Virus record (IMG/VR): IMGVR_UViG_3300032214_000715
Span: 1 to 64,000 of that record
Direction: 5' to 3' (one strand)
DNA length: 64,000 nucleotides
How positions within the stretch are numbered: the first letter of the stretch is position 1; each line of letters begins with the position of its first letter. Under the pieces are notes generated by a model that was not told the origin of the DNA, made no database searches, and worked only from the letters and a program-made list of their open reading frames with translations. The translations under genes and the position numbers were made by a program. This document shows, one piece after another, positions 9,372-40,872 of the stretch.

Positions 9372-9426
9372 CTACTTGATTGCGTTAATAAATCTATACA
9401 GATAAATACTCATAGTACTATACACT

Positions 9427-12892: not shown

Positions 12893-12893
12893 T

Positions 12894-13931: not shown

Positions 13932-13949
13932 GATGATAAATACTAAATT

Positions 13950-16103
13950 ATGCGTGTAAAAGAATACTATTCAAATAAATCAGTACTACTTGAGTACAAT
14001 CGCTCAATTACGGCAAGACATTATGGTGCCAAATTAATTAGAGCACTATTAAATACTGAGTATGGTAAGAAAACATTAGCCTCATACGGTACAAATGAAA
14101 AAGAATTACTTGATAAATTAAGCACAGATCAGAATTTACAAACGGCAGTATTGGCTCCGTTTGAAGAAATGGACCCTACCAGCAATAAAGAATTTACACC
14201 TTGGATAATCAATAAGTTTGTAAATAATGAATTACCCAGTATTGATGGGACTGATATTGCGACTTATATTAAAAAATTATTAACTAACTTTGCTTGGGCT
14301 CGGGGTAAAAAACTATTATCACAAACAGATATTAATCGTTATTCATACGCAGAATTAGTAAGTAAATGTGATTTCTATCCTGAGATAGCGGATACCAAAG
14401 TATTGTATAACGGTCCGGAAGGTCAATTTGTAATACCAAATACCGTAAAGGCAAGTATGGAATTACAAAAGATTGGAACTGTAACTAGTTGGTGTACTGC
14501 TGACAGTCGTGCTCCTAGACATTATCCTGGATACACCAGTCGTGGTCCCTTATATGTTTGGATTGATCATACTGGCGACAAAGTTCAATTTCATTTTCCC
14601 GATGGTCAGTTTCAAAAAGAAAATAATATGAGTATTAGGCCCGAAGAACTTGAAACTCTATTAAATAGCAGACCGCAATTTGCTAAAGTGTTTATGCCAA
14701 TACTAACACGAGAGTTTGTTAATCGCCCAGAACTTTCTAGATTATTACCACAGAGCATAATTAAGAAAATTAGTGAGCGAGTAAATCTAGATTGGGCTAG
14801 AGTTATTAAAGGCAATCCAGAAATAATTCTGACCCTACCATCATATGTAATTACTCGTGAAATGCTTGAAGTAGCAATTGATTCTGACGCAATGCTTTTA
14901 TTAAGAGTTCCATCACAATTAGTAGATCGTGAATTATTAGAATTAGCTATTCTACACAAAGCATATAAAGTAGATTTATTCGTAGAGAGATTTCCAAAAC
15001 TTGTAGACAATAAATTATTATTTGATCTGATGAAGGAGGATTATACTGTAGCTAAAGCCTTATCTCCACTATATTGGAATCAAGAGTTGGTAACTGCTGC
15101 TGTAAATGCTGTGCCAGAATATATTAAATATGTTCCGATACAGTATGTTAATAAAGAACTGTTATTAAAAGCCGGGCATTATGATCCAAATTTATTTTTA
15201 ATATCAGAATTTAAAGAATATATGACACCCGCGGTTGCCATGGGTATTGTGAAGGAAAACGGTCTAAGACATTTTGACAAAATACCAGAACGATTAGTAA
15301 ATAAGACGTTATTGGCAACTGCGTTAAAGTATTCTGAATCAAGATTAGATAGAGATGGACAACCAAGTGCTTATGTAAATCGTGAATTTCTCACTAAAGC
15401 ATATCAAGCATATCCCGACTTATTTACTGATGATGTAATTAAAATTGGTATCAAATATAACTCGGCTATGCTTAGAATAATGCCCGATGATAGAAAAACT
15501 TTAGAGGTATGTACCACGGCAGTTAAAAAGAATCCTACAAATATTGCTTATGTGCCGGAAGAATTTAGACCTAAATTATGGGTGTTGGCATTGACAATGG
15601 AGCCAGATTTGATAGTTCATAACGAGTCACATCAATATATTACCAAAGAAGTAGCACACGCTATGATAAAACGAGATGGCGGTCAAATTCTGAATCCAGT
15701 GATACCAAAAGAGTTTAAAACTCTACCGATGTATAGATTGGCTGCTATTAGTACGCCCAGTATAAACTCTCAAGTAAGAATATCAGATGCTATAAAAGAA
15801 CAAAGAAAATCAGCAAATATATTTGCTGATGTTGATTCAGAAAAATACCCAACACTAAGTGCGGTATATCAAAAGTACGGTAATAAAAACTGGCCACACG
15901 GCGAAAACTCATTATTAACCCGAGTACCAATTAATTTATTTGATAGTCTCAGAGCAGATTTAAGTAAATTCTCTCGTGATATTGGCGGTCGTTATAAAGT
16001 AATGTGGCGTGGTAAACGTGCCGAAAGAAGAGCACATACTAAACGAGAGGAAGCAGTGGCATTCTCAATTTATGCCTCTATGAGTCACCTTTACAAAAGA
16101 TAA
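13950..16103 (+). CDS. WCT-domain family protein 2 with DUF4116-like repeats
   Basis: VLLEY; DPTSNKEF..W, WCTA, GPLY; repeats like TAVKKNPTNIAYVP; late promoter 13936-13942. Confidence 0.75.
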   Translation: MRVKEYYSNKSVLLEYNRSITARHYGAKLIRALLNTEYGKKTLASYGTNEKELLDKLSTDQNLQTAVLAPFEEMDPTSNKEFTPWIINKFVNNELPSIDGTDIATYIKKLLTNFAWARGKKLLSQTDINRYSYAELVSKCDFYPEIADTKVLYNGPEGQFVIPNTVKASMELQKIGTVTSWCTADSRAPRHYPGYTSRGPLYVWIDHTGDKVQFHFPDGQFQKENNMSIRPEELETLLNSRPQFAKVFMPILTREFVNRPELSRLLPQSIIKKISERVNLDWARVIKGNPEIILTLPSYVITREMLEVAIDSDAMLLLRVPSQLVDRELLELAILHKAYKVDLFVERFPKLVDNKLLFDLMKEDYTVAKALSPLYWNQELVTAAVNAVPEYIKYVPIQYVNKELLLKAGHYDPNLFLISEFKEYMTPAVAMGIVKENGLRHFDKIPERLVNKTLLATALKYSESRLDRDGQPSAYVNREFLTKAYQAYPDLFTDDVIKIGIKYNSAMLRIMPDDRKTLEVCTTAVKKNPTNIAYVPEEFRPKLWVLALTMEPDLIVHNESHQYITKEVAHAMIKRDGGQILNPVIPKEFKTLPMYRLAAISTPSINSQVRISDAIKEQRKSANIFADVDSEKYPTLSAVYQKYGNKNWPHGENSLLTRVPINLFDSLRADLSKFSRDIGGRYKVMWRGKRAERRAHTKREEAVAFSIYASMSHLYKR

Positions 16104-16105
16104 TT

Positions 16106-17461
16106 ATGAGATACAGTGAATTATTACTTGAATATCAGCAGACAGTTACTGTGCGTAATTATGGAGATGCTCTATTTGATAAATTCTTACGGCACGAATC
16201 TGATACTACAAAAATCAATATATTGAAACACGTACATAGCGATGCTCAATTTGAATTAATACTAAATCGTACAAAACTTAATCAAGAATTAATTGCTCGT
16301 AAAACTGAAATTGTTGGCGCGATTGTAGGAATAATTGAAGATGCTGATCCTACACCAAATAAACAATATGTAGTATGGTTAATCAGAATGTATATCAAAG
16401 ATAATCATACAGAAAAATTAGAAGATGTAGCTAGTACTATCAGTGATTATCTTAAAGATTTTGTTAATTTAAATAGTCGTGGTATTATACCCAGCCCACA
16501 AAATGATATTAATAGATATCGGAGTTTTGATGAGTTTTCTTTTGAAGTAGTATCATTACGCACAGAGTATAAAGACAAATTAAAAATACAAACTGATTTG
16601 AAAAATAGTCAAAGTCGTGTGTATTACGAAGATGAATTACTTAAAGTAATTGTGCCGTTTAATATGGAAGCCGCGATTAAGTATGGACAATATGTAAATG
16701 GTGCTACTGGTCGCTCTGAGCCAAATCAACATACTAAATGGTGTACGGCTGCCACCAAGGCTAATAATTATTTTCAAGACTATCATGATAGTGGTCCACT
16801 GTATATAGTATTCCCTAAACAACCCGAATATGAGGGAGAAAAATATCAGATACATCCTGCTACTGGTGAGTTTATGGATCCAACAAATAAACCGGCTGAT
16901 TCAAGAAAAGTATTTGATAGATTTCCCGAGTTTGCTGATACTATAATAGATGATGAGCCCGATCTAAAAAATATGATAGGGTTAACTGACGATAAAACAT
17001 TAATTGAAATATTTGACGCTTGTGTGCGAATGGCTCAGGTATCTATTGAAAATATACATAGCAATGATTCTGATGCTGAAGAGTATGGTTCTCAGTATGA
17101 TGTGTTGTACAGAGCGTTATTCTATCTATACAGTGATAAAGTTCCACACAGTACCGTACTCAATCAAATAAAACAAAAAACTGCTGATTCTAGAATTTAC
17201 AGTGTACTTCAAATGTCAGTCATAGTCAGAGACATGATTACTATTATAATAATGAAATCCACTGGTAATACCAGTAAAGATATTCAATCTCAATTCGGTG
17301 ATCTATTAGATTTAATAGAAATGGATGTCAAGGTATTAGTTAATAATCCAGACGATGATTCACAAATTCGCAAAATAACACCGATTGATAGTGAAGAAGT
17401 GGGTAATTATATAGTAGCAGCAATTGTTGGTATGGGTAATTACTTGAATCGTGACTATTAA
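16106..17461 (+). CDS. WCT-domain family protein 3
   Basis: MRYSELLLEY; DPTPNKQY..W, WCTA, GPLY, EKYQIH, EFMD. Confidence 0.75.
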   Translation: MRYSELLLEYQQTVTVRNYGDALFDKFLRHESDTTKINILKHVHSDAQFELILNRTKLNQELIARKTEIVGAIVGIIEDADPTPNKQYVVWLIRMYIKDNHTEKLEDVASTISDYLKDFVNLNSRGIIPSPQNDINRYRSFDEFSFEVVSLRTEYKDKLKIQTDLKNSQSRVYYEDELLKVIVPFNMEAAIKYGQYVNGATGRSEPNQHTKWCTAATKANNYFQDYHDSGPLYIVFPKQPEYEGEKYQIHPATGEFMDPTNKPADSRKVFDRFPEFADTIIDDEPDLKNMIGLTDDKTLIEIFDACVRMAQVSIENIHSNDSDAEEYGSQYDVLYRALFYLYSDKVPHSTVLNQIKQKTADSRIYSVLQMSVIVRDMITIIIMKSTGNTSKDIQSQFGDLLDLIEMDVKVLVNNPDDDSQIRKITPIDSEEVGNYIVAAIVGMGNYLNRDY

Positions 17462-17478
17462 AATTACTAAATACTAAT

Positions 17479-19770
17479 ATGCGTGCGTCGGAATTTTATA
17501 GATCAGTATTACTTGAATATAATCGTGATGTTACCAAGCGTCAATTTGGTAATAAATTATTGGCGGCGTGGGAGCGTGGTGCTGATTTAGGCAATGATTC
17601 ACATGCTGCTGGACATATTCTGAAACTATACGGACCAGATGAAACTCCCGAGAATATAGTAAATAAAATACTGTCAATAATAGAGCGCAGTGACCCTACA
17701 TATACTCAAGGAGGCGGAGGGTTATATGTGCCCTGGTTAGCTCGCGAATATGCTGCTGGTAATATCAAAAGATTAGAAGACTTATTTGGTTGGAAACAAT
17801 TATTAGCCGATTTTCATCGCTATAAAGTGCGTGGTAATTTCCCACAACAATATAAAGATATTGGTAAATTAACTGCTACAAGTGGTATCAGTGAGTATGG
17901 ATTGGCTGATGTGTTGGAGAAATATTCAGGTAATGTCACAACTGAATTCAGTAATACCTATCGCAGTACAGTAACCGAATTAGTTAAGCGTGGCGAAGCA
18001 ACAGAATTATATAGCGACAATAATGTCATATTGGTGAGACCATTAACAGAATCAGCCTCTAAACAATTAGGCTCGCCAAGATGGTGTACTGCGTGGGAGA
18101 AAAATAATCGTTTTCATTTCTACAATAACGCAGGTCCACTTTACATACTATTACCCTTACACCCAACTCATCGCACTGAAAGATATCAGATACATTTTGA
18201 ATCTAGACAAATAATGAATGAGCACGATAATGAGGTGTCACTCAGTATTATTTTCAAACGATTCCCAGAATTACAGAAGGTATTTAATCAAATAGTACCA
18301 GATCAGATAGACTATATTTCTACAATTCCGCACGCCACGGTAATGAAATTATTTCAGGCATGCTGTAAATTAATTACAACGCCCGAGGCAACAAATGTAA
18401 TTGAATTAGGTATAGACGATGATTCAAATACTCCAGTCAAATATTATATAGATGATATTGAAAATTTGTTATCAGATTTTGCCGATAATTTTGATGAAGA
18501 GTATATGGAAGCAATGATAACTGAAGGATTAGGAATAGATACTCATATATCTGATTTACCAAGATTAATTGGTGCTATGTTAGCTAACAACTTCTATGCC
18601 GATAGAGCTATCAATGGAAGAGAATCTCTATTAACAGGAGAATTACTAGAGCCATATATTAAGTGGATCAATGAACATATTGAAATCAGTAGAAAAGATG
18701 CCAATTTATCAGCCGAGATTCGCAGCACTATTCGCAAATCTATTAATGTTGATCGTTGGATGGCATATATGTCTATTCCGAAAAAAACATATAAATTACG
18801 AGAATCAATATTAACAGAAGATCCAGAACGAAGAAGAGAATATGTATATACCAAATACTTTGACAAGTTATTTAATAAAGCGACTAATGACGACACTGAT
18901 TTATATATGTTCTTCAATGAGCGTGGGGATGATGTCAGTGACGAATATTTTGATTTCTTCACTCGCGAGTGGTACAAACCAGGAGTAGTAGAGAAAATAA
19001 TTCAGATACTGGTAGATAGTGATCCAACTCGTGAGTTAATATATATTGACTGGTTAGCTCGTCAATACTTAAATGAAACTATTCCTAGTCTAGAAGATGT
19101 TTATTCTTATGAGAATCCTCTTAGACAGTATCAACGATATAAGAACTCACCCGATTTCCCACAAGAATACAAAGATATCAATCGTTTAAATGGTTCCAAC
19201 TTCATGGAGTTAATGACAAAATGGTATAAACCTCCAGAAAACAAAAACCCAGGAAAAACTTTAGTCGTAGACGATAACGAACTATATACTGCTATGGTAC
19301 CATTAGATGAACCGGGTTCTCAAAAACTAGGGTTGGGTACTAACTGGTGTACGGCATATACTCAAGCACCGTGTAGATATGTTGATTACAGTGAGCGCGG
19401 TGAATTAATAGTATTGATACCTAAGAAACCAGCACAAGCCGGAGAAAAGTATCAGATACATTTAAGACTAAGACTAAGAAAATCAGATTCTGGTATTCGT
19501 GGATGGCAAGTTATTACAGACATGGGAGATTTTAACGAATATTTCGGTAAAGATAGTGAAATTGCTTTGGGCGAGTGTAGCACTCAAACAAATCATGATA
19601 TCAGATTTCGTGGAATAGTTAATAGATTTGGTGCTGGTCCAGTACTTAATACTCTAAACAAACTAGGTGCTCTACAAGCCACTGGAAAATATAAGTCTCA
19701 TGCTAATCAAAATATCTCAGATATTGCTGAGTTATATGGTCAATTATATGAATATGATTGGAAAGACTGA
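17479..19770 (+). CDS. WCT-domain family protein 4 (two domain copies)
   Basis: VLLEY; WCTA twice, EKYQIH/ERYQIH; internal LRESILTE; CTAAATA 17467-17473. Confidence 0.75.
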   Translation: MRASEFYRSVLLEYNRDVTKRQFGNKLLAAWERGADLGNDSHAAGHILKLYGPDETPENIVNKILSIIERSDPTYTQGGGGLYVPWLAREYAAGNIKRLEDLFGWKQLLADFHRYKVRGNFPQQYKDIGKLTATSGISEYGLADVLEKYSGNVTTEFSNTYRSTVTELVKRGEATELYSDNNVILVRPLTESASKQLGSPRWCTAWEKNNRFHFYNNAGPLYILLPLHPTHRTERYQIHFESRQIMNEHDNEVSLSIIFKRFPELQKVFNQIVPDQIDYISTIPHATVMKLFQACCKLITTPEATNVIELGIDDDSNTPVKYYIDDIENLLSDFADNFDEEYMEAMITEGLGIDTHISDLPRLIGAMLANNFYADRAINGRESLLTGELLEPYIKWINEHIEISRKDANLSAEIRSTIRKSINVDRWMAYMSIPKKTYKLRESILTEDPERRREYVYTKYFDKLFNKATNDDTDLYMFFNERGDDVSDEYFDFFTREWYKPGVVEKIIQILVDSDPTRELIYIDWLARQYLNETIPSLEDVYSYENPLRQYQRYKNSPDFPQEYKDINRLNGSNFMELMTKWYKPPENKNPGKTLVVDDNELYTAMVPLDEPGSQKLGLGTNWCTAYTQAPCRYVDYSERGELIVLIPKKPAQAGEKYQIHLRLRLRKSDSGIRGWQVITDMGDFNEYFGKDSEIALGECSTQTNHDIRFRGIVNRFGAGPVLNTLNKLGALQATGKYKSHANQNISDIAELYGQLYEYDWKD

Positions 19771-19772
19771 CA

Positions 19773-20447
19773 ATGAGAGTCAAAGACTTATTAGAATATG
19801 ACAGTGATAGTCCAGCCGGCAAACAGATAATGGACATATTGTCTGATAACGGATATGAATTATTAGGCAGCGGTGTAGATAAATCAGTATGGGCAAAAAC
19901 TGAAGACAATGTTGTTGGTATATTGATGCCGTCATCAAAAAAGATAGATGATGCTATGAAGAGCTTTTTAGTTCTGTATAACTTGGCAAAAGAATTTCCC
20001 AATAATAAACATTTGCCACGATATGTTAAGTTTAGAGATGAATCGGGTAAAGAATCGCACTATAGTGAATTTACTGTAGCGGGACGAAAATTCATACAAT
20101 TTGGTATGGAACGATTAATATCAATTGACTGGAATAGCGATCTTATGAATGTTTTATATCAAGTAAGAAACTTTGCTCAATTTCGTCATCATATGCGTTG
20201 GCCCGAAATATGGACTAGATTATGTGGTATGTCTAAGTATTTAAAATCTAAAGAGATTAAATCTCGTTTAGAAGATGTAGAGATATCATTCAAAGAGTTA
20301 TACGATACTATGAAATTAATTATTGATCGTGGTATGGCGGCTGACTTATATATTGATAGATTTGAAAATAATATAATGATGCGTAAAGATGGTACTCCAG
20401 TAATAGTTGACCCATATTACTACACTTCAGTTAATAGACCCAAGTAA
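19773..20447 (+). CDS. Ser/Thr protein kinase-like
   Basis: MRVKDLLEY; LGSG, DRFENNIM, VIVDPY. Confidence 0.7.
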   Translation: MRVKDLLEYDSDSPAGKQIMDILSDNGYELLGSGVDKSVWAKTEDNVVGILMPSSKKIDDAMKSFLVLYNLAKEFPNNKHLPRYVKFRDESGKESHYSEFTVAGRKFIQFGMERLISIDWNSDLMNVLYQVRNFAQFRHHMRWPEIWTRLCGMSKYLKSKEIKSRLEDVEISFKELYDTMKLIIDRGMAADLYIDRFENNIMMRKDGTPVIVDPYYYTSVNRPK

Positions 20448-20450
20448 ATT

Positions 20451-21914
20451 ATGAGAGCAGATCAGTTTATATTATTAGAGTATGATGCCAAGAAAACGAT
20501 ACAGGCACTGGGCAATAAATTATTAATTGCTCTGGCTAAAACTCACCCATTTTTTATACCTGATCATCTATATGGCGCAAGTGTATTAGCAGCAACGGCA
20601 TTTTTTCCAGCAAAATATGATCAGGGTCGTGATATTGTGATGGATATTGTTGGTAAAATGGCGGCATTTAGTTCATTAAATGCTCCCGAAGTACTTGAAA
20701 AATTCAAAGAGCCAATATTAATCGCATTGTTGAAAGAGATAGAAGAAAAAGATCCAACCGCACACAAAGAATATACTCCGTGGTTAGCCCGGGTATGGGC
20801 CGCGGCTGGTCAGCCGAACTCTACTGAGGGAAGTCTTAAACTTGAAGATTTAAATCGTGGTAATGTCTTGGGCGCTTTTGATATAGGTAAGCGTAAAAGA
20901 AAGATTAAACCAGAACACAGTGATATTGGTAGATATCGCAGTTACGCGGAGTTTGAAAACACAATTAAATCAAATTACAATATATATAATTTACTGGGCG
21001 TGGAAGACCCAGATGAAGATCCAGGTAATTATGAGGTTGTTTATAATGACGGCAGTATTGTGCGTGTAATTGTTCCGCTAGATAAACAAGCTGCTTGTTA
21101 TTGGGGGAAAAATACTGAGTGGTGTACTGCTACTCGCACTGGAAAAAATTATTATGACTACTATAGTAGTCGTGGCAAACTATACATAATACTACCATAT
21201 AACCCAAAATATCCCGAAGAAAAATATCAATTACATTTTGAAACTGAACAATTCAAAGATGAAAATGATGATGATGTAGATTTGTCAGCAATACTACGCA
21301 AGTATCCTGGATTAGAAGAATTCTTTGTCAGACAAATCCCCCAATTAAAAAAATACATGGCGTTTATTAAAGATGACACACTGACTGAAATTATAAAAGT
21401 AATACTACCAGTGGCACTTGATACGGCATGGGAGATTGTAAATGAGTGGGAATCAAATGATGAGTACTGGTATTCATGGCGAGCAGAACAAGCAATTGAA
21501 TTGGGATATGTCACTGATGATGGAGATATAGATTGGGATCGTGTAAATGAAGATGATCGTCTAAATGATTATACTAGATATAGTGATGAAGCTCGTAGAT
21601 TTATTAATGATGTAAAAAGTATCGGCAACTTAACTGGTAAAACAATTAAAAAATTAACCACCGAGTATGTAGAAAGCGGGCATGCTGAAGAATCTATGCC
21701 AACGATAAGTTTATTACCATATATATTAATCTATTACGTAAATGGATTCAAGAATGGTGATAATGGTGATTCTTTACGCTCAGTGTTTTTTAAGTTTTCT
21801 TTCTATGAGTCTGATTACTATAATACTGTCAGTGTTAATCGTGAATTAAAAAAATATATTCAAAAAATAGGCGAAGTTGATGATATTTCCATTATGGCAA
21901 GAACCAACATATAA
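20451..21914 (+). CDS. WCT-domain family protein 5 (closest to 11420)
   Basis: MRADQFILLEY; LEDLNR, KIKPEH.DI, WCTA, EKYQLHF. Confidence 0.75.
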   Translation: MRADQFILLEYDAKKTIQALGNKLLIALAKTHPFFIPDHLYGASVLAATAFFPAKYDQGRDIVMDIVGKMAAFSSLNAPEVLEKFKEPILIALLKEIEEKDPTAHKEYTPWLARVWAAAGQPNSTEGSLKLEDLNRGNVLGAFDIGKRKRKIKPEHSDIGRYRSYAEFENTIKSNYNIYNLLGVEDPDEDPGNYEVVYNDGSIVRVIVPLDKQAACYWGKNTEWCTATRTGKNYYDYYSSRGKLYIILPYNPKYPEEKYQLHFETEQFKDENDDDVDLSAILRKYPGLEEFFVRQIPQLKKYMAFIKDDTLTEIIKVILPVALDTAWEIVNEWESNDEYWYSWRAEQAIELGYVTDDGDIDWDRVNEDDRLNDYTRYSDEARRFINDVKSIGNLTGKTIKKLTTEYVESGHAEESMPTISLLPYILIYYVNGFKNGDNGDSLRSVFFKFSFYESDYYNTVSVNRELKKYIQKIGEVDDISIMARTNI

Positions 21915-21928
21915 CGATAAATATTACT

Positions 21929-22360
21929 ATGAAAATACTACTATCACTATTACTAGCAATATCTGTTTTATCAGCAACTGCCGCAGAAAAATCCGGCGTG
22001 GCATATAACTATAAAGTCACTAGAGTCGTTGATGGTGACACCGTTGGATTTGAAGCATCGTTTTTACCTGTCCCTCTCAAAAAAGAGTTAAGCGTCAGAG
22101 TGTATGGTGTTGATACTCCAGAAAAGGGACATCGTGCTAAGTGTGACGCAGAAAACAAGCGTGGATTAGAAGCAACTGCGTTTACTAAAAAAATGATAAC
22201 CTCGGCCAAAAGAACACAGATTGTTATCATTGATTGGGACAAATACGGTGGGCGTGTATTGGGCGATGTTCTAATAGATGGAATCAGTTTGCGTTCTATG
22301 TTGATTAGCAGCGGATATGCTAGACCGTATTTTGGCGAAGCAAAACAAAGCTGGTGTTAA
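21929..22360 (+). CDS. Secreted thermonuclease (SNase-like)
   Basis: Signal peptide; VVDGDT, RVYGVDTPE, DKYGGRVL; late promoter 21917-21923. Confidence 0.9.
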   Translation: MKILLSLLLAISVLSATAAEKSGVAYNYKVTRVVDGDTVGFEASFLPVPLKKELSVRVYGVDTPEKGHRAKCDAENKRGLEATAFTKKMITSAKRTQIVIIDWDKYGGRVLGDVLIDGISLRSMLISSGYARPYFGEAKQSWC

Positions 22361-22380
22361 TATACTAGGAAAAATATATC

Positions 22381-22890
22381 ATGAAGAAAAAATTAGATGA
22401 GAATAAAATTGTTGGTAGTTTTTTTGGAATACCAGTTTCAAAAAAACAACTGAATGAATTTGCTAATCTATCTAAGTCAGCGATCACAGATGACGATGTT
22501 GTTATTGACAGACCGGATCAAGTCACCGATGTAAGTTCAGCCAGAAATGAACTACTAAGAATAATGAAGTTGGCTGGGCAAGGCGGTTCTCAAAATAAAC
22601 CCGCTGGTTGGAATCTAGTATTATACAACGATGATATTACTCCGGGAGAAGCAGTTATTGACGGGCTTAAAAGTGTCATGAACATGAGTGGGGCTGCGAT
22701 ATCAAGAGTTATACATGACTGTACTCTTAAGGGTCACGCAGTTCTTGGAACATATGCAATAGAAGACAAAGCACTCAGATTAAGAGATTCACTGAAACAA
22801 GCAATAGACAGTAATCGTGAACATGTCGGTGGAAATAATACTAACGGGCCCTGGGATGTAAAGATAGAAGTGCTTAAAGCAGGCGACTAA
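22381..22890 (+). CDS. ClpS-like domain protein with N-terminal extension
   Basis: LVLYNDDITPGEAVI..L...H..G.AV matches ClpS core. Confidence 0.6.
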   Translation: MKKKLDENKIVGSFFGIPVSKKQLNEFANLSKSAITDDDVVIDRPDQVTDVSSARNELLRIMKLAGQGGSQNKPAGWNLVLYNDDITPGEAVIDGLKSVMNMSGAAISRVIHDCTLKGHAVLGTYAIEDKALRLRDSLKQAIDSNREHVGGNNTNGPWDVKIEVLKAGD

Positions 22891-22891
22891 T

Positions 22892-23356
22892 GTGAAAATT
22901 TTTGATATTCTCAATGAGATAGCCAATAATCCTTATCCAGTTGAGTTGGCAAAAGATACTGGTGACACTATCAATTACAAATTTGTCACTGACAGTGGTG
23001 TAGATTATTGGGTTAGTTTTAGAACAGAAAAAAATAAAGATAAGCGTGGTGCTTGGTTGGTGGTAACAGCGGGCAAACCAACAGGGCTAAAAGACAAAAA
23101 CTATAAAAACAAAACAGGAATTACTGGTACTGGCGATCAATTTCGTGTATTCGCATCTATAGGAAATGCCATCAATCAATATGTTAATTCCTCTCATCAA
23201 CCAGACTTTATTACATTTACAGCAAGAGAAGAATCACGCGTCAAATTGTACAATTTGATTACTAGAAATATCAGTGATTATGTCAGTGGATGGACTCGCG
23301 GAAAAGTAATAAGAACTCCCAAATACACTTTATACACTGTAGTAAAGCAAAAATAG
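22892..23356 (+). CDS. Hypothetical internal-head-like protein (GTG start)
   Basis: MKIFDILNE N-terminus. Confidence 0.6.
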   Translation: MKIFDILNEIANNPYPVELAKDTGDTINYKFVTDSGVDYWVSFRTEKNKDKRGAWLVVTAGKPTGLKDKNYKNKTGITGTGDQFRVFASIGNAINQYVNSSHQPDFITFTAREESRVKLYNLITRNISDYVSGWTRGKVIRTPKYTLYTVVKQK

Positions 23357-23476
23357 ATAAATACTAATAGCACACTACCTTGGGACTTTTTAGTCACGGT
23401 GTGTTCAGAGCGGCTGCTGCTATTTCTACTCTTATCGCCATTCGTGTAGAATAAAGTGAGCACTAATTTATGTATT

Positions 23477-24112
23477 ATGCTGTCAAAAGAAATTATAAAT
23501 GAGATGGATAGAAGAAATTTTCTAGGGGCAACTTTAGGAACAGTCGCCGGTGTCGGACAAGCACAGGCAGCACCCTATGTGAATTTTGATAATATGACTA
23601 CTCAACAGCATAACTTTTATAGAGAAAAAATCTCTGATCTTCAATGGAGAGCATCAAGAATATTAGGAAATCTTAAAGAGACATTAGCCTCCAAAAATGC
23701 AGCAGCCTATAAAAAAATAGAAAATAAAAAAGTGACGGTGTTTTACTATAAGTGGCTAGCAGGCGTTACAGAAAAGGGTTTAGAACTGGACGTTACTGTT
23801 TTTTGGGATTTGCCAGACGATAGTATTGCTTGTACACTCGGGCATGAATTGGCACACATTGTGCTAGGGCACAATTCAAATGTAAATAATAAGCAGGAAG
23901 AACACGCCGCCGATTTATGGGGAGCAAAATTGGCGCAACAAGCAGGATACTCAGTAGAAGAGGCATTACGAGGTGTTTATGAGGCCGGGGGACAGTATGG
24001 CAAGGGAAGCGCTAGTCATCCGAGTTATACTGAAAGAGTATTACATCTTAGAAAAAATGGATATCCATTAAAAATCAATGGAACATTTCATCCAGAAACA
24101 ATAAAAAAATAA
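23477..24112 (+). CDS. M48-family zinc metallopeptidase with Tat-like signal
   Basis: HELAH, E..AD..G, SHP..R motifs; IINE then MDRRNFLG...AQAA. Confidence 0.78.
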   Translation: MLSKEIINEMDRRNFLGATLGTVAGVGQAQAAPYVNFDNMTTQQHNFYREKISDLQWRASRILGNLKETLASKNAAAYKKIENKKVTVFYYKWLAGVTEKGLELDVTVFWDLPDDSIACTLGHELAHIVLGHNSNVNNKQEEHAADLWGAKLAQQAGYSVEEALRGVYEAGGQYGKGSASHPSYTERVLHLRKNGYPLKINGTFHPETIKK

Positions 24113-24144
24113 CGAACATAAAGTGAGTACTAATATCAAGTATT

Positions 24145-25509
24145 ATGCGTGTAAATGAAATAGAACGATATCCGGCCGATTCTGATAACAACGATATACA
24201 AGCTAATCGTGAGTCTATGGTATCCGAAGCAGAAACTAGAACCAAAGCCGCAGATATAAAATCAAATCGTGTTCATCTAATCGTGTTTGATATAGATGAC
24301 ACCTTATTTCATACCACGGCAAAGATCAATGTTATAAAGCCAGACGGTACTAAACTTAGTTTAACTAATCAACAATACAACAACTACGTTTCTGAACCCG
24401 GTGATAAATTTGACTTTGAAGAGTTTAAGGACGCGGAAAAGTTTAGTCGCGAAAGTGATCCTATCCGTCCAATGATAGCAAAGCTAAAAGCAATACTAAA
24501 CAACTCACGAACTAGCAAAATCATTATGCTTACCGCACGTAGTGATTTTGACGATAGAGATAAATTTCTAGAAACGTTTGCCAGATACGGCATAGATATG
24601 AGTCGCGTACACGTACATCGTGCTGGTAACTTGAATCACCCAAATAGTCCAGCAGAAAAAAAGGCAGTGTTTATTAGAAACTATCTGAATACTAATAAGT
24701 ATGATCGCGTTACAATGTACGATGATAGTATGAAGAATCTACGTGTATTCTCTGAATTAAAGAGTGAGTATCCGAACGTACAATTTTCTCCCTACTTCGT
24801 AGATCATCACGGAAGAATTAAGTTAATTCGTGAGTCTATGGTATCCGAAGCAGAAACTAGAACCAAAGCCGCAAAAGAAATCAACAAGACTTTCAAAGAA
24901 AGTGGCTACAAAAAATTAGGTAGTGGCGCAGAAGCAACTGTATGGGCAAAAGATGAGCATAGCGTTATAAAAATAATTATGCCAGAAGATCGCTCAAGTA
25001 TGGATTCTGCTGTGCGTACATTTAAGAAGTTCTATGAATTTTGTATTAAAAATGCGGAGCAGTCAAATTTGCCACGATTCGTACAAGTTACCAAAAACGG
25101 ACACGTGGAAACATTTACTGCTGCCAATCGTGAATTTACTATGATCGGCATGGAACGTCTAAAGCCTCTAAAAGAGGGTAGCTTCAGTCAAGCGCTAATA
25201 TGGATGATGAGCGATCTTGTCACTCACGGAAAAAGATGGAACGAAGCACACAAATTAATGACTAAGCCATCAACATGGAAACACTGGGACGGTCCACCAA
25301 CCGTAAAAGAGTTAGTAGCTAAAATAAAAAATCTTGATGATCTAACTTATGCCAAGTTTGATGTGCTATATACTCTAATGCTGCTATTGTACAAGCGAGG
25401 CAAGCTAGACAAAGTTGGTTGGGATTTACACACAGAGAATGTCATGCAGCGTTCTGACGGAACACTGGTTATAGTTGATCCATGGTTTGCCAGTGAGATG
25501 AAAGATTAA
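24145..25509 (+). CDS. HAD phosphatase / protein kinase fusion
   Basis: FDIDDTL, LTAR, YDD (HAD); LGSGAE, VIK, DLHTEN, IVDPW (kinase). Confidence 0.8.
   Translation: MRVNEIERYPADSDNNDIQANRESMVSEAETRTKAADIKSNRVHLIVFDIDDTLFHTTAKINVIKPDGTKLSLTNQQYNNYVSEPGDKFDFEEFKDAEKFSRESDPIRPMIAKLKAILNNSRTSKIIMLTARSDFDDRDKFLETFARYGIDMSRVHVHRAGNLNHPNSPAEKKAVFIRNYLNTNKYDRVTMYDDSMKNLRVFSELKSEYPNVQFSPYFVDHHGRIKLIRESMVSEAETRTKAAKEINKTFKESGYKKLGSGAEATVWAKDEHSVIKIIMPEDRSSMDSAVRTFKKFYEFCIKNAEQSNLPRFVQVTKNGHVETFTAANREFTMIGMERLKPLKEGSFSQALIWMMSDLVTHGKRWNEAHKLMTKPSTWKHWDGPPTVKELVAKIKNLDDLTYAKFDVLYTLMLLLYKRGKLDKVGWDLHTENVMQRSDGTLVIVDPWFASEMKD
24207..24873 (+). repeat. 46-bp perfect direct repeat flanking the HAD domain
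   Basis: TCGTGAGTCTATGGTATCCGAAGCAGAAACTAGAACCAAAGCCGCA at 24207-24252 and 24828-24873. Confidence 0.92.
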
Positions 25510-25835
25510 CTCTTTGGCACAAAACTGCTGCCACACCCGCAACTAGTTTCTGCGTTTGGATTATCAACGACGAATTTCTTTTCCCACAATTCATCTACAT
25601 AATCAACTTTGGCGCCCTCTAAGTACTGAGCACTTATGGGATCAATTACCACTCTAGCAGAGTCAGCATTCAATAGAAAATCATCTTCACTGAAATCTTC
25701 GTCCAACACGAATTGATAACTTAAACCAGCACATCCTCCACCACGCACTGCTATGCGTATGCGAGTATCGTTGTTGTTGGTTTCTAACAATACATCAGTT
25801 ATCTTTGCTCGGGCACTGTCTGTAAAATTTATCAT
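25506..25835 (-). CDS. iscA: A-type Fe-S carrier (IscA/ErpA/HesB family)
   Basis: GGGCAG and CGCGSSF motifs. Confidence 0.9.
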   Translation of the reverse strand: MINFTDSARAKITDVLLETNNNDTRIRIAVRGGGCAGLSYQFVLDEDFSEDDFLLNADSARVVIDPISAQYLEGAKVDYVDELWEKKFVVDNPNAETSCGCGSSFVPKS

Positions 25836-26392
25836 TTGTATCCCTGACCCCATCTTGTGTTCAGTACATTCCAATCCATTATTCGCCAGATGTTGTCAAG
25901 ATATCGTTGCTTATTAGAACCATAATCATGTTGATAGGCATGCTCCCATAAATCTATCAGAATTAGAATGTCATTTCTAACTTGATGATTATTTATGATT
26001 TTAATAGAACCATCACGTGATAGATATATCCATCCGCTACCGTGTAGCTTCATTGCTTCTGTTTCTATAGCATCTTTGAACCCATCAAAACTTTTGAATT
26101 TAGTTTTTATCAGATTTCCAATTGGACCGTTGGGCACATTATTCATTCTAGCTGGTCTAAATTGCTGAAAATACACATTGTGTAACCAGGCACCAGCATA
26201 GTTGAATACGGAATCGCCCTGTCTGTTATTGAAGCGATCAGCATAGCCATGAGCAAGTTTCTCGTAGTGTAGCTTCATCAATGATGAAGATAACACCGGA
26301 GCAAATTGACTGATGCTATGTGCCAACTTAACAATCTCAACTTTGTCTTGAGAGTTAAGTTTTGATTCAACTAAATCTATAATATCACGCAT
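25832..26392 (-). CDS. sod: Fe/Mn superoxide dismutase
   Basis: LHY, LHN, DLWEHAY ligands; GSGW; start moved to MRDIIDLVE, late promoter 26398-26404. Confidence 0.88.
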   Translation of the reverse strand: MRDIIDLVESKLNSQDKVEIVKLAHSISQFAPVLSSSLMKLHYEKLAHGYADRFNNRQGDSVFNYAGAWLHNVYFQQFRPARMNNVPNGPIGNLIKTKFKSFDGFKDAIETEAMKLHGSGWIYLSRDGSIKIINNHQVRNDILILIDLWEHAYQHDYGSNKQRYLDNIWRIMDWNVLNTRWGQGYK

Positions 26393-26420
26393 AAATGTAT
26401 TTATCATGCGTGATCACGAA

Positions 26421-26639
26421 TCACAGTCGTTTCACAATTCGTCCCTTGCTCAAATCGTAGGGTGAAAATTCTAGTTCTACTGCGTCTCCGAGTAGAATTC
26501 TAATTTCATGCTGTCTCATACGCCCGCTAATATGCCCAATAACTATTTGATTATTGTTTCCTAGCTTAACGCGAAACATTGCGTTAGGTAGTACATCTGT
26601 TACTGTACCTTCAAGTTTGATTACATCTGTTTTTGCCAT
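26421..26639 (-). CDS. infA: Translation initiation factor IF-1
   Basis: [26 protein letters not shown]...[10 protein letters not shown]. Confidence 0.95.
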
Positions 26640-29652: not shown

Positions 29653-30462
29653 TATTTAGCATACGTGTATAGACTTACACACAAAATTAATGGGCATTTT
29701 TATATAGGATATCGATGTAGAAACATAAAACTCAAACTTCTTCCAGAAGATGATTTGGGAGTAGTATACTTTACTTCGTCAAAATATATTAATAAAACCA
29801 ATTTTTCTGAATATCACGCTGAGATATTATTTAAATCAACTTCTTCAAATGAAGCATATGATTTTGAAAATAAACTCATACAGGAATCTTGGAATAATCC
29901 CTTATTACTGAATAGAAGTTTTCAACAAAACGGAAATCTTAGATTCAAAATAACAGAGGACGGGTCTAACAAGCTGAGTAAACTAAATAAAAATAAAAAA
30001 TGGTATAACAACGGCGTCAAAGAAATTTATTCTCACTATAAACCAGATAATTTTGAAGAAGGGAGACTTAAAAATCCATTTCCAAAAAATAAAGGGTGGA
30101 CAAAAAATTATAATTGGTATAATAACGGGAACAAAGAAATACTTCTCGAAAAAGACAAAGTTCCTCCTTTCGGATTTATTAAAGGAAAATTACCTGCCAC
30201 AGAAGATACTAATAAAAAAATTAGTATCACTATGAAACAAATTGCCCCAGCAAAAGGAAAAAAATGGTATACTAACGGAAAACAGTCTGTTTTGACACAC
30301 AAGTGCCCACATGGGTGGAATCCAGGACACTCGCATGGATCAGGAAATTCTCATTTAAATAGAGATTACAGCGGCTATCATTGGTATACAGACGGAAAGA
30401 ACACTATAAGGGCACGAGAGTGCCCAGAAGGATTTTCATTAGGAAGAAAAGTTAAATTCTAG
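29650..30462 (+). CDS. GIY-YIG homing endonuclease-like with KWYxxG repeats
   Basis: [18 protein letters not shown]; five KWYNNG/WYTDG repeats; antisense to neighbours. Confidence 0.8.
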
Positions 30463-31036
30463 AATTAATTACTTTGTCGGCTAATCCAAAATTAACTGAT
30501 GACTGAGCGTCCATATAGTTATCTCTAGTCATTGCTTGCTTTAATTCTTCTACACTTTTTCCGGTATTTTTTGAATATATATCTATAAGTGTATTATTCA
30601 GTCTAATCATTTCTTCCATTTGAATTTCTGCATCCCACACTGTTCCACGCGACCCGCCAGAAACAGAATGAATCATGTGTCTTGCTCGCGGCAATATAAA
30701 TCTTTTACTTTTGACGCCAGCACTCGCAAGTAAACTACCCATTGAGCAAACGCTTCCGATAGCTATGGTACTTACGTCGCAACTTATAAAATCCATAGTG
30801 TCCAATATAGCCAATCCAGCTGTAACAGACCCACCGGGACTATTAATATAGAGATGAATATCCTTATTGGAATCTTCGCTTTCTAGAAACAATAATTGAG
30901 CTACAATTAAATTTGCCATTTGATCATTAACTTCGCCTTCTAATAAAATAACTCTGTCTTTTAGAAGACGACTATAGATATCCATAGCCCTTTCGCCTTT
31001 TGAAGTGTTCTCAATTACCATTGGTACTAGTGCCAT
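30452..31036 (-). CDS. clpP: ATP-dependent Clp protease proteolytic subunit
   Basis: [21 protein letters not shown] (Ser), MIH, RDNY. Confidence 0.95.
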
Positions 31037-31641
31037 TATTTAACCTTTCTTGTTGTTGAGTTTGTAATCATTTGTGTGGGTGTGGATATCATATCGCACA
31101 CTTTAAATTTTAGTGCCTCTTCGGCGCTAAGCCAACGATCTTGCGCCGGCAATAAGTATTCTTTTATCACATCATCGTCCGCTTCAGTACAAAGACGATA
31201 ATTTTCTATCATCCTTGTGTGAGTCAACTCATATTCACGCATAGTAGCAAAAAGCTCGTGTAGTTTTCCTTCGTTATACCAACTAAATTGATGAGATAGT
31301 ATGCTTGTATTTGGAGTTAGTGTTCTACGACCCTTTGTACCGTTCATAAAAATAAGTAATCCACAACTAGCAATCTGCCCTAGACCTACTGTTTTAATCG
31401 GTATGTTGCTGTTTCTCATTACATCAATCAGAGCAAAAGTAGTTTGTAATTCTCCGCCCTCGCTACAGATCAGTAACTGTAACTCAGTCTTTTTTTTCTT
31501 AGAAACGTAGTTTTCGTACAGAATCCATTCAATAACCGGCTTTATTGACTCGTCATTTACTTCGCCCATAAACACGTATATTCCGGAATTATTCAATGCT
31601 TCAGAATGCGTGCTATCAGTGTCTTCTTGTTCAGTTGCCAT
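31036..31641 (-). CDS. clpP: Second, divergent ClpP paralog
   Basis: ICSEGG, IASCG (Ser), [13 protein letters not shown]. Confidence 0.85.
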
Positions 31642-33614: not shown

Positions 33615-33821
33615 TTAGTACATCTTTTTTGGAAGTTCCTGACTATCTAGATATTTTTTCCAGCGATTACGAGCTTTGCTCTTTGCTACTTTTTTATCTA
33701 TGCTGGGCTTTACATAAAATTCACGTTCTCGTAGTGTTTGTAGCAAACCACTATCGGCTACTTTCTTTTTGAACTTACGCATCGCAATTTCGAAATTGTC
33801 TTTTGTATTAACTACCTTCAT
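33615..33821 (-). CDS. rpsU: Ribosomal protein S21
   Basis: FEIAMRKFKKKV..SG....REFYVKPS. Confidence 0.88.
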   Translation of the reverse strand: MKVVNTKDNFEIAMRKFKKKVADSGLLQTLREREFYVKPSIDKKVAKSKARNRWKKYLDSQELPKKMY

Positions 33822-39921: not shown

Positions 39922-40155
39922 TCACGATTCAACTCCAAAAAATGTTTTATGTAAGGCTTCGAGATAATCGTCTGTGCCCATATGCGAATTGCCATTGTCA
40001 ATCTTACTATAGATGCCAGCACATTCTTTCACAATCAACTCGGCGAGTTTTTCCGCAAACGCATATAATTCAGGGTTGGCAGAAATTTTCCTGTTGACTG
40101 TTTCTTCTGCCATAAACTTTGCCTGATTCGCAAGTTCCTTAATTCGTTCGTTCAT
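39922..40155 (-). CDS. MNERIKE-family paralog
   Basis: MNERIKELA, LAELIVKEC, FFGVES. Confidence 0.8.
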   Translation of the reverse strand: MNERIKELANQAKFMAEETVNRKISANPELYAFAEKLAELIVKECAGIYSKIDNGNSHMGTDDYLEALHKTFFGVES

Positions 40156-40273
40156 TTTGTTATCCTATATCCTACATACCAGAGATCAATACGGAAAAAC
40201 CAATTGCCTTTATTTTTACCAAAGCCGATTCGTAGCATACGGTCATCTTTGTCTAGTAAGATTTTTGTCAACA

Positions 40274-40770: not shown

Positions 40771-40872
40771 TTGCAATCTCTTTTAATCTAAGGACAAAAT
40801 CTGTTTGTTCGTATTCACCATAAACATTAACGAGCCTTGAGGCTAACCATAGTAGAAATTCTTTATCACTCA

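What the first reader, a model, noticed from the sequence alone, without database searches (positions are those of the whole stretch)
23477..24112. Capsid-targeting leader stacked on a twin-arginine signal in an M48 peptidase
Seen: MLSKEIINE, then MDRRNFLG-ATLGTVAGVG-QAQA/A, then an HELAH peptidase. Inference: removal of the leader in the prohead unmasks a Tat signal, so the ejected folded enzyme could be exported to the periplasm by host Tat. This would be a two-step route from capsid to envelope. A plain start at the MDRR ATG (23504) is the simpler alternative.
Basis: partly seen in the sequence, partly recalled or inferred. Interest (0 to 1): 0.6.

Follow-up and report, generated by a model that had tools for sequence, protein, structure and literature searches.

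The report
Head-packaging leader stacked on Tat signal
A giant T4-like phage encodes a small zinc protease that carries two address labels in a row, one like those that load proteins into the phage head and one for export across the bacterial inner membrane; this suggests, but does not prove, that an injected phage enzyme is sent on to the cell envelope.

Summary
ORF 23477-24112 (+) reads MLSKEIINE, then MDRRNFLGATLGTVAGVGQAQA|AP, then an M48-like zinc peptidase (HELAH, EEHAAD, SHPSYTER).

The stack is not a chance second ATG. A HMMER search of 1.84 billion representatives found 81 homologues, 28 with the same build.
- The twin arginines are invariant, on a par with the near-invariant catalytic residues.
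- In 26 of 28, a [LIVMF]-x-E motif ends 2-3 residues before RR (shuffles: mean 3.2, maximum 11).
- In about nine, the RR signal and peptidase lie inside larger proteins rather than at the N-terminus of a leader, always behind such a motif.
- At least 13 further homologues keep the leader but lack the RR signal, so the two are separate modules.

The leader resembles T4's capsid-targeting sequence (MKTYQEFIAE|A). About 27 genes of this phage start with it. The same phage encodes T4-type portal, gp21-like prohead protease and gp23 capsid protein.

A plain start at 23504 is therefore disfavoured. Packaging, cleavage at E9 and Tat export after ejection remain inferred; no tool could test them. I found no description of this combination.

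The parts
23356..23370 (+). Late-promoter-like motif GATAAATACTAATAG, about 107 nt upstream of the ATG. It has the same ATAAATAC core as the motifs in front of tail, fibre and many leader-bearing genes.
   Evidence: Read and picked up as repeat D3. Genome-wide, the motif lies 11-31 nt before many ATGs. It is enriched before leader genes: 10 of 27 against 33 of 279 (p = 0.0015). Its function is inferred from the T4 late-promoter consensus (own knowledge).
23450..23484 (+). A 5' element shared only with the next gene (copy at 24117-24152): ATAAAGTGAG[C/T]ACTAAT, 6-7 nt, then GTATTATGC. It ends on the start codon. Its function is unknown.
   Evidence: It has exactly two copies in 239 kb; the alignment is. 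In both copies the ATG lies in the same register.
23477..23503 (+). Leader MLSKEIINE (residues 1-9). It is a candidate capsid-targeting propeptide ending in I-N-E, with predicted cleavage E9|M10.
   Evidence: The same kind of N-terminus opens about 27 genes of this genome and the homologues. T4 IPIII and IPII begin MKTYQEFIAE|A. The T4 protease cuts after Glu in I/L-x-E.
23504..23569 (+). Twin-arginine signal peptide MDRRNFLGATLGTVAGVGQAQA (residues 10-31). It has RR at 12-13, a Gly/Ala/Thr-rich h-region, and A-Q-A with predicted signal-peptidase cleavage A31|A32.
   Evidence: TAT_signal and TIGR01409 are the top hits, just under their cut-offs. R12 and R13 are invariant and L16 nearly so in 28 homologues. 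Homologue segments score above the cut-off: P0010 at 31.9 bits and internal P0031 at 27.5 bits. The region is disordered in the AF2 model.
23570..24109 (+). Mature M48-like zinc metallopeptidase domain (residues 32-211). It carries H123-E124-x-x-H127, E142 and D146 (EEHAAD), and the motif H181-P182 ... R187.
   Evidence: PF01435 scores 33.5 bits. These residues are near-invariant. The AF2 mean pLDDT is 81.9, and blocks from residue 41 on average 76 or more. The best structural matches are E. coli BepA (Z 10.9, rmsd 4.2, 144 aligned) and the M48 protein 3c37 (Z 10.0).
24110..24112 (+). Stop codon TAA
8655..25509 (+). Tandem array of at least 14 co-oriented genes whose products begin with the same kind of leader (MRADQFITE, MKIHDIINE, MRATQFITE, MRYSELLLE, MKIFDILNE, MLSKEIINE, MRVNEIE and others). 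The peptidase gene is one member. The array is interrupted by a Sec-signal nuclease gene and a ClpS-like gene.
   Evidence: A syntenic array in a relative has the same leaders, with the peptidase module fused into a 783-aa protein (L009).

Best explanation
The gene encodes a precursor of three parts: a T4-type capsid-targeting propeptide (residues 1-9), a twin-arginine signal peptide (residues 10-31), and a small M48-like zinc protease.

The proposed route has five steps.
1. The gene is expressed late, together with head and tail genes.
2. The leader docks the precursor to the scaffolding core of the prohead.
3. The phage's gp21-like serine protease cuts after I-N-E9. This removes the acidic leader and leaves M-D-R-R... 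as the new N-terminus.
4. The protein is ejected with the DNA into the next host's cytoplasm, where it refolds and binds zinc.
5. The host Tat system exports it, and signal peptidase cuts at AQA|A. It then acts as a protease in the periplasm within minutes of infection.

I take its most likely role to be remodelling or destroying envelope proteins, for example to exclude superinfecting phages or to disarm an envelope-located defence.

Shown here: the three modules, their conservation, the position of the cleavage motif, the internal copies in larger proteins, and the T4-type head genes in the same phage.
Inferred: late expression, packaging, the cleavage itself, ejection, Tat export, and the substrate.
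For: - The window is the start of a 239-kb phage record. A 341-kb assembly that is identical over the 11,197 nt of overlap compared carries T4-type portal, Peptidase_S77, a scaffold-like protein and Gp23 just beyond the record's end. Its protease matches the T4 gp21 structure 5JBL at E 3.6e-15.
- The record also has a T4-type large terminase and weaker, sub-threshold gp32-like and UvsX-like matches.
- T4 internal proteins begin MKTYQEFIAE|A, read from NC_000866. Their 10-19-residue propeptides target the core and are cut after Glu in motifs such as ITE-6, LTE-619 and LIE-9 (PMC9026906, PMC5694885). Leaders here read MRAREFINE, MRATQFITE and MLSKEIINE.
- The leader motif is enriched at N-termini (p = 3.5e-9). 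It is associated with the late-promoter-like motif (p = 0.0015).
- The 28 aligned sequences that share the build have 23-46% identity to the window protein. RR is invariant; H123, E124, H127, E142 and D146 are near-invariant.
- [LIVMF]-x-E ends 2-3 residues before RR in 26 of 28. In 2000 shuffles the mean was 3.2 and the maximum 11.
- About nine homologues carry the RR signal and peptidase inside larger proteins of 339-1217 aa, behind L-x-E, V-x-E or M-x-E. One of these sits in an array syntenic to the window's.
- At least 13 homologues have the leader and no RR signal.
- TAT_signal is the top hit in 9 of 10 homologue segments and exceeds the cut-off in two.
- The net charge of the 20 residues before RR, counted with RR, ranges from -5 to +3, mostly near zero. 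After the predicted cut it is +1 to +2 plus a free amino group. Tat n-regions normally carry net positive charge (PMC13673990).
- The fold is closest to the periplasmic M48 protease BepA.
Against: - There is no virion proteome, no transcript map and no cultured relative. Nothing similar was found in 50,697 phage records.
- The window's own Tat scores are just below both curated cut-offs.
- A 9-residue N-terminal extension is within the normal range of Tat n-regions (own knowledge, e.g. TorA). The unprocessed precursor could therefore be exported from the producing cell without ever entering a head.
- In the shortest homologues (MRIDEIT-RR, MKINEII-RR) the leader cannot be told apart from an ordinary n-region.
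- The homologues are related by descent, so the 26 of 28 count does not represent independent events.
- The gene lies among auxiliary genes (nuclease, ClpS-like, SOD, IscA, IF-1), not in the head module.
- The host is unknown. IF-1 points only weakly to Gammaproteobacteria, so the presence of Tat in the host is assumed.
Confidence: 0.42

Rival explanations
1. This is an ordinary Tat-exported periplasmic protease made during infection and never packaged. Translation starts at 23477, and the whole of residues 1-31 acts as one Tat signal peptide with an 11-residue n-region. The MRxxEFIxE-type N-terminus shared by many genes of this phage lineage would then serve some other purpose, such as efficient initiation on short-leader or leaderless late mRNAs, or a common regulatory tag. 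The enzyme acts in the periplasm of the producing cell, for example in superinfection exclusion or in preparing lysis.
For: - The length of the n-region is within the range of known Tat substrates (own knowledge).
- Several leader genes have the promoter-like motif only 11-15 nt before the ATG, with no Shine-Dalgarno sequence.
- The gene sits among auxiliary genes, next to a Sec-signal nuclease that also points to periplasmic activity in the producing cell.
- The shortest homologues look like plain Tat signals.
Against: - It does not explain why the RR signal lies inside larger proteins of 339-1217 aa, always behind [LIVM]-x-E.
- It does not explain why the same leader heads homologues with no RR signal.
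- It does not explain why the leader resembles the T4 CTS in a phage with a gp21-type protease.
- Conservation is at the amino-acid level, with synonymous differences among leaders such as CGT/CGC and GTA/GTT. That argues against a purely nucleotide-level signal.
Confidence: 0.28
2. The protein is packaged and ejected as proposed, but the RR-hydrophobic segment is not used for Tat export. It could act as a membrane anchor or as a contact with the prohead core or the inner membrane. The protease would then work on the cytoplasmic side, or process the neighbouring polyproteins, as proposed for metallopeptidase domains of polyvalent proteins.
For: - Iyer et al. 2017 proposed that metallopeptidase domains in packaged polyvalent proteins release other domains or attack host proteins (PMC5512222).
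- Homologues without any RR signal exist, so the enzyme can presumably work without export.
- Internal hydrophobic segments can be anchors.
Against: - The segment matches the Tat consensus in detail: RR-x-F-L-[KRG]-G, a weakly hydrophobic Gly/Ala-rich h-region, and A-x-A. TAT_signal is its best Pfam match in 9 of 10 homologues.
- The h-region is too short and too weakly hydrophobic for a typical transmembrane helix (sequence).
- The closest folds are periplasmic or membrane M48 enzymes.
Confidence: 0.15
3. Translation starts at the MDRR ATG (23504), or at the GTG at 23456, and the nine upstream codons are not part of the protein.
For: - One public gene call uses 23504 (202 aa).
- Neither ATG has a good Shine-Dalgarno sequence.
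Against: - Most homologues have no Met at the equivalent place and begin with the leader.
- The leader is a genome-wide N-terminal motif.
- The ATG at 23477 sits in the same register of the shared 5' element as the start of the next gene. Its GTATT-ATG context resembles other leader genes.
- A start at the GTG would bury the motif, which is strictly N-terminal everywhere else.
Confidence: 0.06

Closest known systems
T4 internal proteins IPI, IPII, IPIII and Alt with their capsid-targeting sequences (CTS)
   Same: - A short N-terminal propeptide (6-19 aa in T4, 9 aa here) that ends in I/L-x-E.
- Near-identical core wording: T4 MKTYQEFIAE against MRAREFINE, MRATQFITE and MLSKEIINE here.
- The same type of head genes, including a gp21-like S77 protease.
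- One leader placed in front of many unrelated cargo proteins.

   Different: - No T4 cargo is known to carry a second, export-type address behind the CTS.
- The cargo here is a periplasm-type protease.
- About 27 genes carry the leader, against a handful in T4.
- Packaging is not shown here.
Bacterial Tat substrates (e.g. TorA, SufI, AmiA/AmiC; own knowledge, and review PMC13673990)
   Same: An RR-x-F-L motif, a weakly hydrophobic h-region, and an A-x-A cleavage site. The profiles PF10518 and TIGR01409 are the best hits.
   Different: - It is phage-encoded.
- It is preceded by an acidic leader ending in a protease motif 2-3 residues before RR.
- In about nine homologues the signal is internal to a large protein.
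- The recent Tat review mentions no phage-delivered substrate.
Periplasmic and outer-membrane M48 proteases of bacteria (BepA/YfgC, LoiP, YcaL)
   Same: - HExxH plus a downstream Glu ligand, and a C-terminal HP....R motif.
- BepA is the best structural match (Z 10.9).
- The predicted periplasmic location.
- More distant homologues in the search carry Sec or lipoprotein signals.
   Different: - It is much smaller (about 180 aa mature) and has no TPR domain.
- Sequence identity is only 16-17%.
- It is routed by Tat instead of Sec/Lol.
Polyvalent proteins of phages and conjugative elements (Iyer et al. 2017, PMC5512222)
   Same: - Multi-domain effector chains predicted to be packaged in the head, injected and cut into domains.
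- The neighbour gene has a weak, below-threshold match to Kinase-PolyVal.
- Homologues of the peptidase sit inside such chains.
   Different: That paper does not mention signal peptides, Tat, M48 or the periplasm. Here the junctions carry a T4-type L-x-E motif, and one domain has its own export signal.
Ejection proteins of phiKZ and SPN3US giant phages with long propeptides
   Same: Head-packaged proteins that a gp21-related protease processes after Glu and that are then ejected into the host (PMC5694885).
   Different: They have a different cleavage motif (S/A/G-x-E), much longer propeptides (over 100 aa), and no export signals described.

Membership tests
Peptidase family M48 | A match to the family profile above the curated threshold | tested here: met
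   PF01435 scores 33.5 bits against a cut-off of 20.3, but only over the C-terminal part of the profile (positions 135-184 of 186). PHROG 87 'metallo-protease' scores E 3.3e-7.
Peptidase family M48 | HExxH zinc site, a third Glu ligand downstream in an E..AD helix, and a C-terminal HP....R motif | tested here: met
   H123, E124, H127, E142, D146, P182 and R187 are near-invariant in 28 homologues. These residues are visible.
Peptidase family M48 | Fold of the catalytic domain like solved M48 enzymes | tested here: met
   VIA-align gives BepA 6sar Z 10.9 (rmsd 4.2, 144 aligned) and 3c37 Z 10.0 (rmsd 3.1, 133 aligned). These are followed by neprilysin, PepO and the minigluzincins. Foldseek E-values are only 0.013-0.02, so this is a distant member.
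Peptidase family M48 | Proteolytic activity | not testable with these tools
   Needs an enzyme assay.
Twin-arginine (Tat) signal peptide | Consensus S/T-R-R-x-F-L-K at the n/h boundary | tested here: met
   The window reads D-R-R-N-F-L-G. RR is invariant and L16 near-invariant.
Twin-arginine (Tat) signal peptide | Profile score above the curated cut-off | tested here: inconclusive
   The window scores 18.6 against 22.7 (PF10518) and 15.9 against 16.7 (TIGR01409). Homologues P0010 (31.9) and P0031 (27.5) pass, and seven others are top hits below the cut-off.
Twin-arginine (Tat) signal peptide | A weakly hydrophobic h-region followed by an A-x-A signal-peptidase site | tested here: met
   The h-region is GATLGTVAGVG, followed by A-Q-A|A. 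Equivalent AQA|G, AEA|G and ANA|N sites occur in homologues.
Twin-arginine (Tat) signal peptide | N-terminal position with a positively charged n-region | tested here: inconclusive
   In the window protein the net charge of the residues before RR, counted with RR, is 0. After the predicted cut it is +1 plus a free N-terminus. In about nine homologues the signal is internal.
Twin-arginine (Tat) signal peptide | Tat-dependent export | not testable with these tools
   Needs fractionation in tat+ and tatC strains, and an RR-to-KK variant.
T4-type capsid-targeting sequence (CTS) | An N-terminal propeptide of about 6-19 residues ending in I/L-x-E | tested here: met
   The window has MLSKEIINE, 9 residues ending I-N-E. 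T4 references were read from NC_000866 and the literature.
T4-type capsid-targeting sequence (CTS) | The phage encodes a gp21-type (S77) prohead protease and a T4-type scaffold/core | tested here: met
   Peptidase_S77, Portal_T4, Gp23 and a coiled-coil 366-aa protein lie on the 341-kb assembly of the same phage. The protease matches 5JBL at E 3.6e-15. None of these lies in the 239-kb record itself.
T4-type capsid-targeting sequence (CTS) | The same leader shared by several otherwise unrelated proteins of the phage | tested here: met
   About 27 genes carry it, with enrichment p = 3.5e-9. The cargo includes kinase-like, HAD, GNAT-like, SLT-like and DUF6267 domains.
T4-type capsid-targeting sequence (CTS) | Presence of the cargo in virions, with the propeptide removed | not testable with these tools
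   There is no cultured phage and no proteome.

The most novel reading that the evidence does not exclude
A lineage of uncultivated T4-type giant phages uses proteolysis in the prohead to create Tat signal peptides. Effector modules are made either with an acidic head-targeting leader or as links of a polyprotein. The gp21-like protease cuts 2-3 residues before the twin arginines. After ejection into a new host, the freed enzyme is exported by the host's own Tat system. This would be a virion-to-cytoplasm-to-periplasm route for a pre-made protein, which has not been described for any phage.
Probability: 0.4. Interest if true: 0.85.

Novelty: new variant of a known kind. Interest (0 to 1): 0.74.

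Why it matters
Proteins injected by phages are known to act in the cytoplasm, against restriction enzymes or RNA polymerase, or to form the DNA conduit. A pre-made enzyme that is injected and then handed to the host's Tat export machinery would reach the envelope before any phage gene is expressed. That would be a new kind of early host takeover or superinfection block.

It would also give a natural example of a Tat signal that becomes active only after proteolysis, including Tat signals buried inside polyproteins.

The idea can be tested directly with the existing T4 CTS packaging system and E. coli tat mutants. The about 27 leader-bearing genes would then give a ready catalogue of likely ejected effectors in a giant phage lineage with no cultured member.

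Tried and rejected
- DNA and protein searches of 50,697 phage records with the gene found nothing.
- A pattern scan of IMG/VR found no relative.
- The word-based protein search returned only the gene itself. For that reason I used the exhaustive HMMER search.
- The near-identical copies (a Logan contig and the ENA contig) show no nucleotide difference, so they give no codon-level test of the leader.
- The 15-nt core of the shared 5' element is not a general promoter: it has only two copies in 239 kb and none in the relative's array.
- The 5' region has no significant RNA fold (z = 0.77) and no Rfam match.
- The sigma-70 and terminator scan was at chance level.
- I rejected the GTG at 23456 as the start because the motif is strictly N-terminal in all relatives.
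- The cultured jumbo phage RsoM2USA shares another domain with a homologue, but its 41-kb region shows no clear leader pattern. No proteome could therefore be borrowed from it.
- The phage encodes no TatA.
- Host inference from IF-1 was indecisive: 60-68% identity, mostly to Gammaproteobacteria.
- Literature searches for twin-arginine together with ejection proteins, polyvalent proteins or capsid targeting returned nothing.

Full report
WHAT IS THERE

The window is the first 64 kb of a 239,163-bp phage record from a metagenome, estimated at 68% complete. The ORF at 23477-24112 (+) reads M1-LSKEIINE9, then M10-DRRNFLGATLGTVAGVGQAQA31 | A32-PY..., then a domain with H123-E-L-A-H127, E141-E142-H-A-A-D146 and S-H-P182-S-Y-T-E-R187.

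Pfam places the domain in Peptidase_M48 (33.5 bits against a cut-off of 20.3). An AlphaFold model built on 28 homologues has mean pLDDT 81.9. Residues 1-29 have pLDDT below 50, and the folded domain begins at about residue 36. The model aligns best with the periplasmic M48 protease BepA (Z 10.9, rmsd 4.2, 144 residues) and the M48 protein 3c37 (Z 10.0).

The two Tat profiles are the best hits for the N-terminus, just below their cut-offs: 18.6 against 22.7, and 15.9 against 16.7. This is the only TAT_signal-like site in a six-frame scan of the whole record.

WHAT KIND OF PHAGE

The record carries a T4-type large terminase, plus weaker, sub-threshold gp32-like and UvsX-like matches. An ATAAATAC motif like the T4 late promoter sits 11-31 nt before many ATGs, mostly of large structural genes.

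The head genes are missing from the record. A 341,154-bp ENA assembly is identical to the record over the 11,197 nt of overlap compared. It continues past the record's end with Portal_T4, a 73-aa protein starting MLLLEF, an acidic 287-aa protein, Peptidase_S77, a coiled-coil 366-aa protein and Gp23. The protease matches the solved T4 gp21 (5JBL) at E 3.6e-15.

The N-termini of these head proteins are dense in L-L-E, I-L-E and L-A-E motifs. This is the kind of site that T4 gp21 cuts: after Glu, as in ITE-6, LTE-619 and LIE-9.

THE LEADER IS A RECURRENT MODULE

About 27 predicted genes of this genome begin M-[RKL]-x-x-[EQD]-[FILVY]-[ILFT]-x-E, for example MRAREFINE, MRATQFITE, MRADQFITE, MKIHDIINE, MRVNEIILE, MLSRELILE and MLSKEIINE. 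A loose form of the motif starts 24 of 306 genes, against 9 of 956 internal Met positions (p = 3.5e-9).

At least 14 of these genes form a tandem array at 8655-25509 that includes the peptidase gene. Others lie beside the terminase. Leaders differ by synonymous codons, so the constraint is on the peptide.

Leader genes have the late-promoter-like motif within 40 nt more often than other genes do: 10 of 27 against 33 of 279 (p = 0.0015). The peptidase gene has a good copy of the motif at 23356-23370.

I read the T4 internal proteins from NC_000866. IPIII and IPII begin MKTYQEFIAE|A, and IPI begins MKTFKEF...ITE|A. The literature states four things:
- These 10-19-residue propeptides target proteins to the scaffolding core.
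- IPIII residues 4 and 7 matter for targeting, and residues 8 and 10 for processing.
- gp21 removes the propeptide.
- The CTS can carry foreign proteins into heads and on into infected cells.

The resemblance of wording, length and terminal I/L-x-E, in a phage with the same protease family, makes a CTS-like role the best reading of the leader.

THE STACK IS CONSERVED

Only the exhaustive HMMER search found relatives: 81 at E up to 0.001. Twenty-eight of them have an RR signal between whatever precedes it and the peptidase. In the alignment of the window protein with 27 of them (23-46% identity to it), R12 and R13 are invariant. L16, H123, E124, H127, E142, D146, P182 and R187 are near-invariant. 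TAT_signal is the best Pfam hit for 9 of 10 homologue segments and passes the cut-off in two.

- A [LIVMF]-x-E motif ends exactly 2 or 3 residues before RR in 26 of 28. Shuffling the upstream 20 residues gives a mean of 3.2 and a maximum of 11 in 2000 trials. A cut there would leave an n-region of 2-3 residues.
- In about nine homologues (339-1217 aa) the RR signal and peptidase lie inside a larger protein, again behind L-x-E, V-x-E or M-x-E. Recurrent G-V-A-E linkers lie elsewhere in the chain. One of these, a 783-aa protein starting MRAGQFITE, lies in an array syntenic with the window's: the same leaders, and the same nuclease, ClpS-like and DUF6934 genes. An internal Tat signal can become N-terminal only by proteolysis.
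- At least 13 homologues keep the leader but have no RR signal. The leader is therefore not merely the n-region of the Tat signal, and the two are separable modules. More distant homologues are bacterial proteins with Sec or lipoprotein signals, which fits a periplasmic ancestry for the enzyme.

WHICH START CODON

- Most homologues have no Met at the position of M10.
- The upstream neighbour of the best homologue's ATG is ATAAATAC-AAT (L008).
- The ATG at 23477 lies in the same register of a 34-nt element as the start of the next gene.
- Its GTATT-ATG context is typical of leader genes.

I conclude that translation starts at 23477. Public gene calls are split between 202 and 211 aa.

MECHANISM AND ITS WEAK POINTS

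The chain I consider most likely is: late expression, docking to the core by the leader, cleavage after E9, ejection with the DNA, refolding, Tat export, and cleavage at A31|A32. The result would be a periplasmic protease acting very early in infection.

Packaged T4 cargo is known to be ejected and to refold in the recipient cell. The shift in charge on cleavage, from about 0 to positive, fits the positive n-region expected of Tat signals.

Against the chain:
- Nothing here shows packaging, cleavage or export.
- A 9-residue extension does not by itself block a Tat signal, so the precursor might be exported in the producing cell.
- The homologues are not independent samples.
- The gene lies among auxiliary genes.
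- The host is unknown.

I put the full chain at about 0.4. The separate probabilities are higher: that the leader is part of the protein about 0.9, that the RR segment is a working Tat signal about 0.75, and that the leader is a CTS-like propeptide about 0.65.

COMPARISON WITH WHAT IS KNOWN

The parts are known: the T4 CTS, Tat signals, M48 proteases, and polyvalent packaged effectors. I did not find the combination described.
- The polyvalent-protein paper does not mention signal peptides, Tat, M48 or the periplasm.
- A 2026 Tat review lists no phage-delivered substrate.
- Three full-text searches that combined these terms found no paper.

I therefore class it as a new variant of a known kind, namely CTS-targeted head cargo. 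If the delivery experiment works, it would amount to a new route.

No other genetic code was used, and no sequence was altered.

Noticed in passing
window 24145-25509 (+); repeats at 24207-24252 and 24828-24873: The next gene encodes leader + HAD-phosphatase-like + kinase-like modules. A perfect 46-nt direct repeat encodes the same linker (RESMVSEAETRTKAA, containing V-S-E) in front of each module. It looks like a two-link polyprotein with identical putative cleavage linkers.
   Followed up: partly
window 23450-23484 and 24117-24152 (+): A 34-nt element, ATAAAGTGAG[C/T]ACTAAT...GTATTATGC, occurs only in front of these two adjacent genes in 239 kb and ends on their start codons. It is not a general promoter. 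It may be a recombination or regulatory cassette like the conserved 5' regions of T4 internal-protein genes.
   Followed up: partly
window 11420-21914 (+): genes at 11420, 13950, 16106, 17479, 19773, 20451: A paralogous family whose leaders end ...L-L-E-Y. A cut after that Glu would expose an N-terminal Tyr, a classical N-degron residue. The phage also encodes a ClpS-like adaptor (22381-22890), ClpX (33818-35032) and two ClpP paralogues (30452-31641). A link between the two is pure speculation.
   Followed up: no
window 21929-22360 (+): A staphylococcal-nuclease homologue with a classical Sec-type signal peptide (MKILLSLLLAISVLSATAAE) sits inside the leader-gene array and is conserved in the syntenic relative. 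It is a second phage enzyme apparently aimed at the periplasm.
   Followed up: partly
G000 233035-233811 (-) = L004:13035-13811: A leader-bearing protein (MRVNEIILE...) next to the terminase gene. It has a hydrophobic segment (LGAAALATGFALGGG) right after the leader and a weak SLT lytic-transglycosylase match (E 0.009). It may be a second case of a head-targeting leader followed by an envelope-directed segment.
   Followed up: partly
whole record, e.g. window 13936-13952 and 17465-17481; G000 233811, 130433, 75049: In several genes the ATAAATAC promoter-like motif starts only 11-15 nt before the ATG, with no Shine-Dalgarno sequence. This suggests leaderless or nearly leaderless late mRNAs.
   Followed up: no
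window 39922-46207 (-): A run of about nine small genes whose products all begin MNERIKELA (or a close variant). Many are preceded by a conserved ...CATTTCGGAGT... upstream sequence. This is a second N-terminal-motif gene family of unknown role.
   Followed up: no
window upstream of 47952-48224 (-) and 42787-43044 (-); also G000 66136, 67965, 137807, 221319, 222975: A conserved element of about 30 nt, (T)ATTCACTGAGTTAGA.AAC.GGAGC, lies directly upstream of many small genes. It is probably another promoter class together with its ribosome-binding site.
   Followed up: no
window 25506-26639 (-): Host-like auxiliary genes lie next to the finding: an IscA/HesB-type Fe-S assembly protein, an Fe/Mn superoxide dismutase and translation initiation factor IF-1. 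IF-1 is 60-68% identical, mostly to gammaproteobacterial IF-1.
   Followed up: partly
window 60842-60931 (-): The single tRNA in the window is called tRNA-Ser with anticodon ACT, which is unusual for a bacterial-type Ser tRNA.
   Followed up: no
L010 (JGI 3300032247 contig, 7.6 kb): One polyprotein homologue (leader, other domains, internal RR signal, peptidase) sits beside CsgG, curlin-repeat and FecR-like genes. This contig may be bacterial, or from a phage that carries curli-like genes.
   Followed up: no
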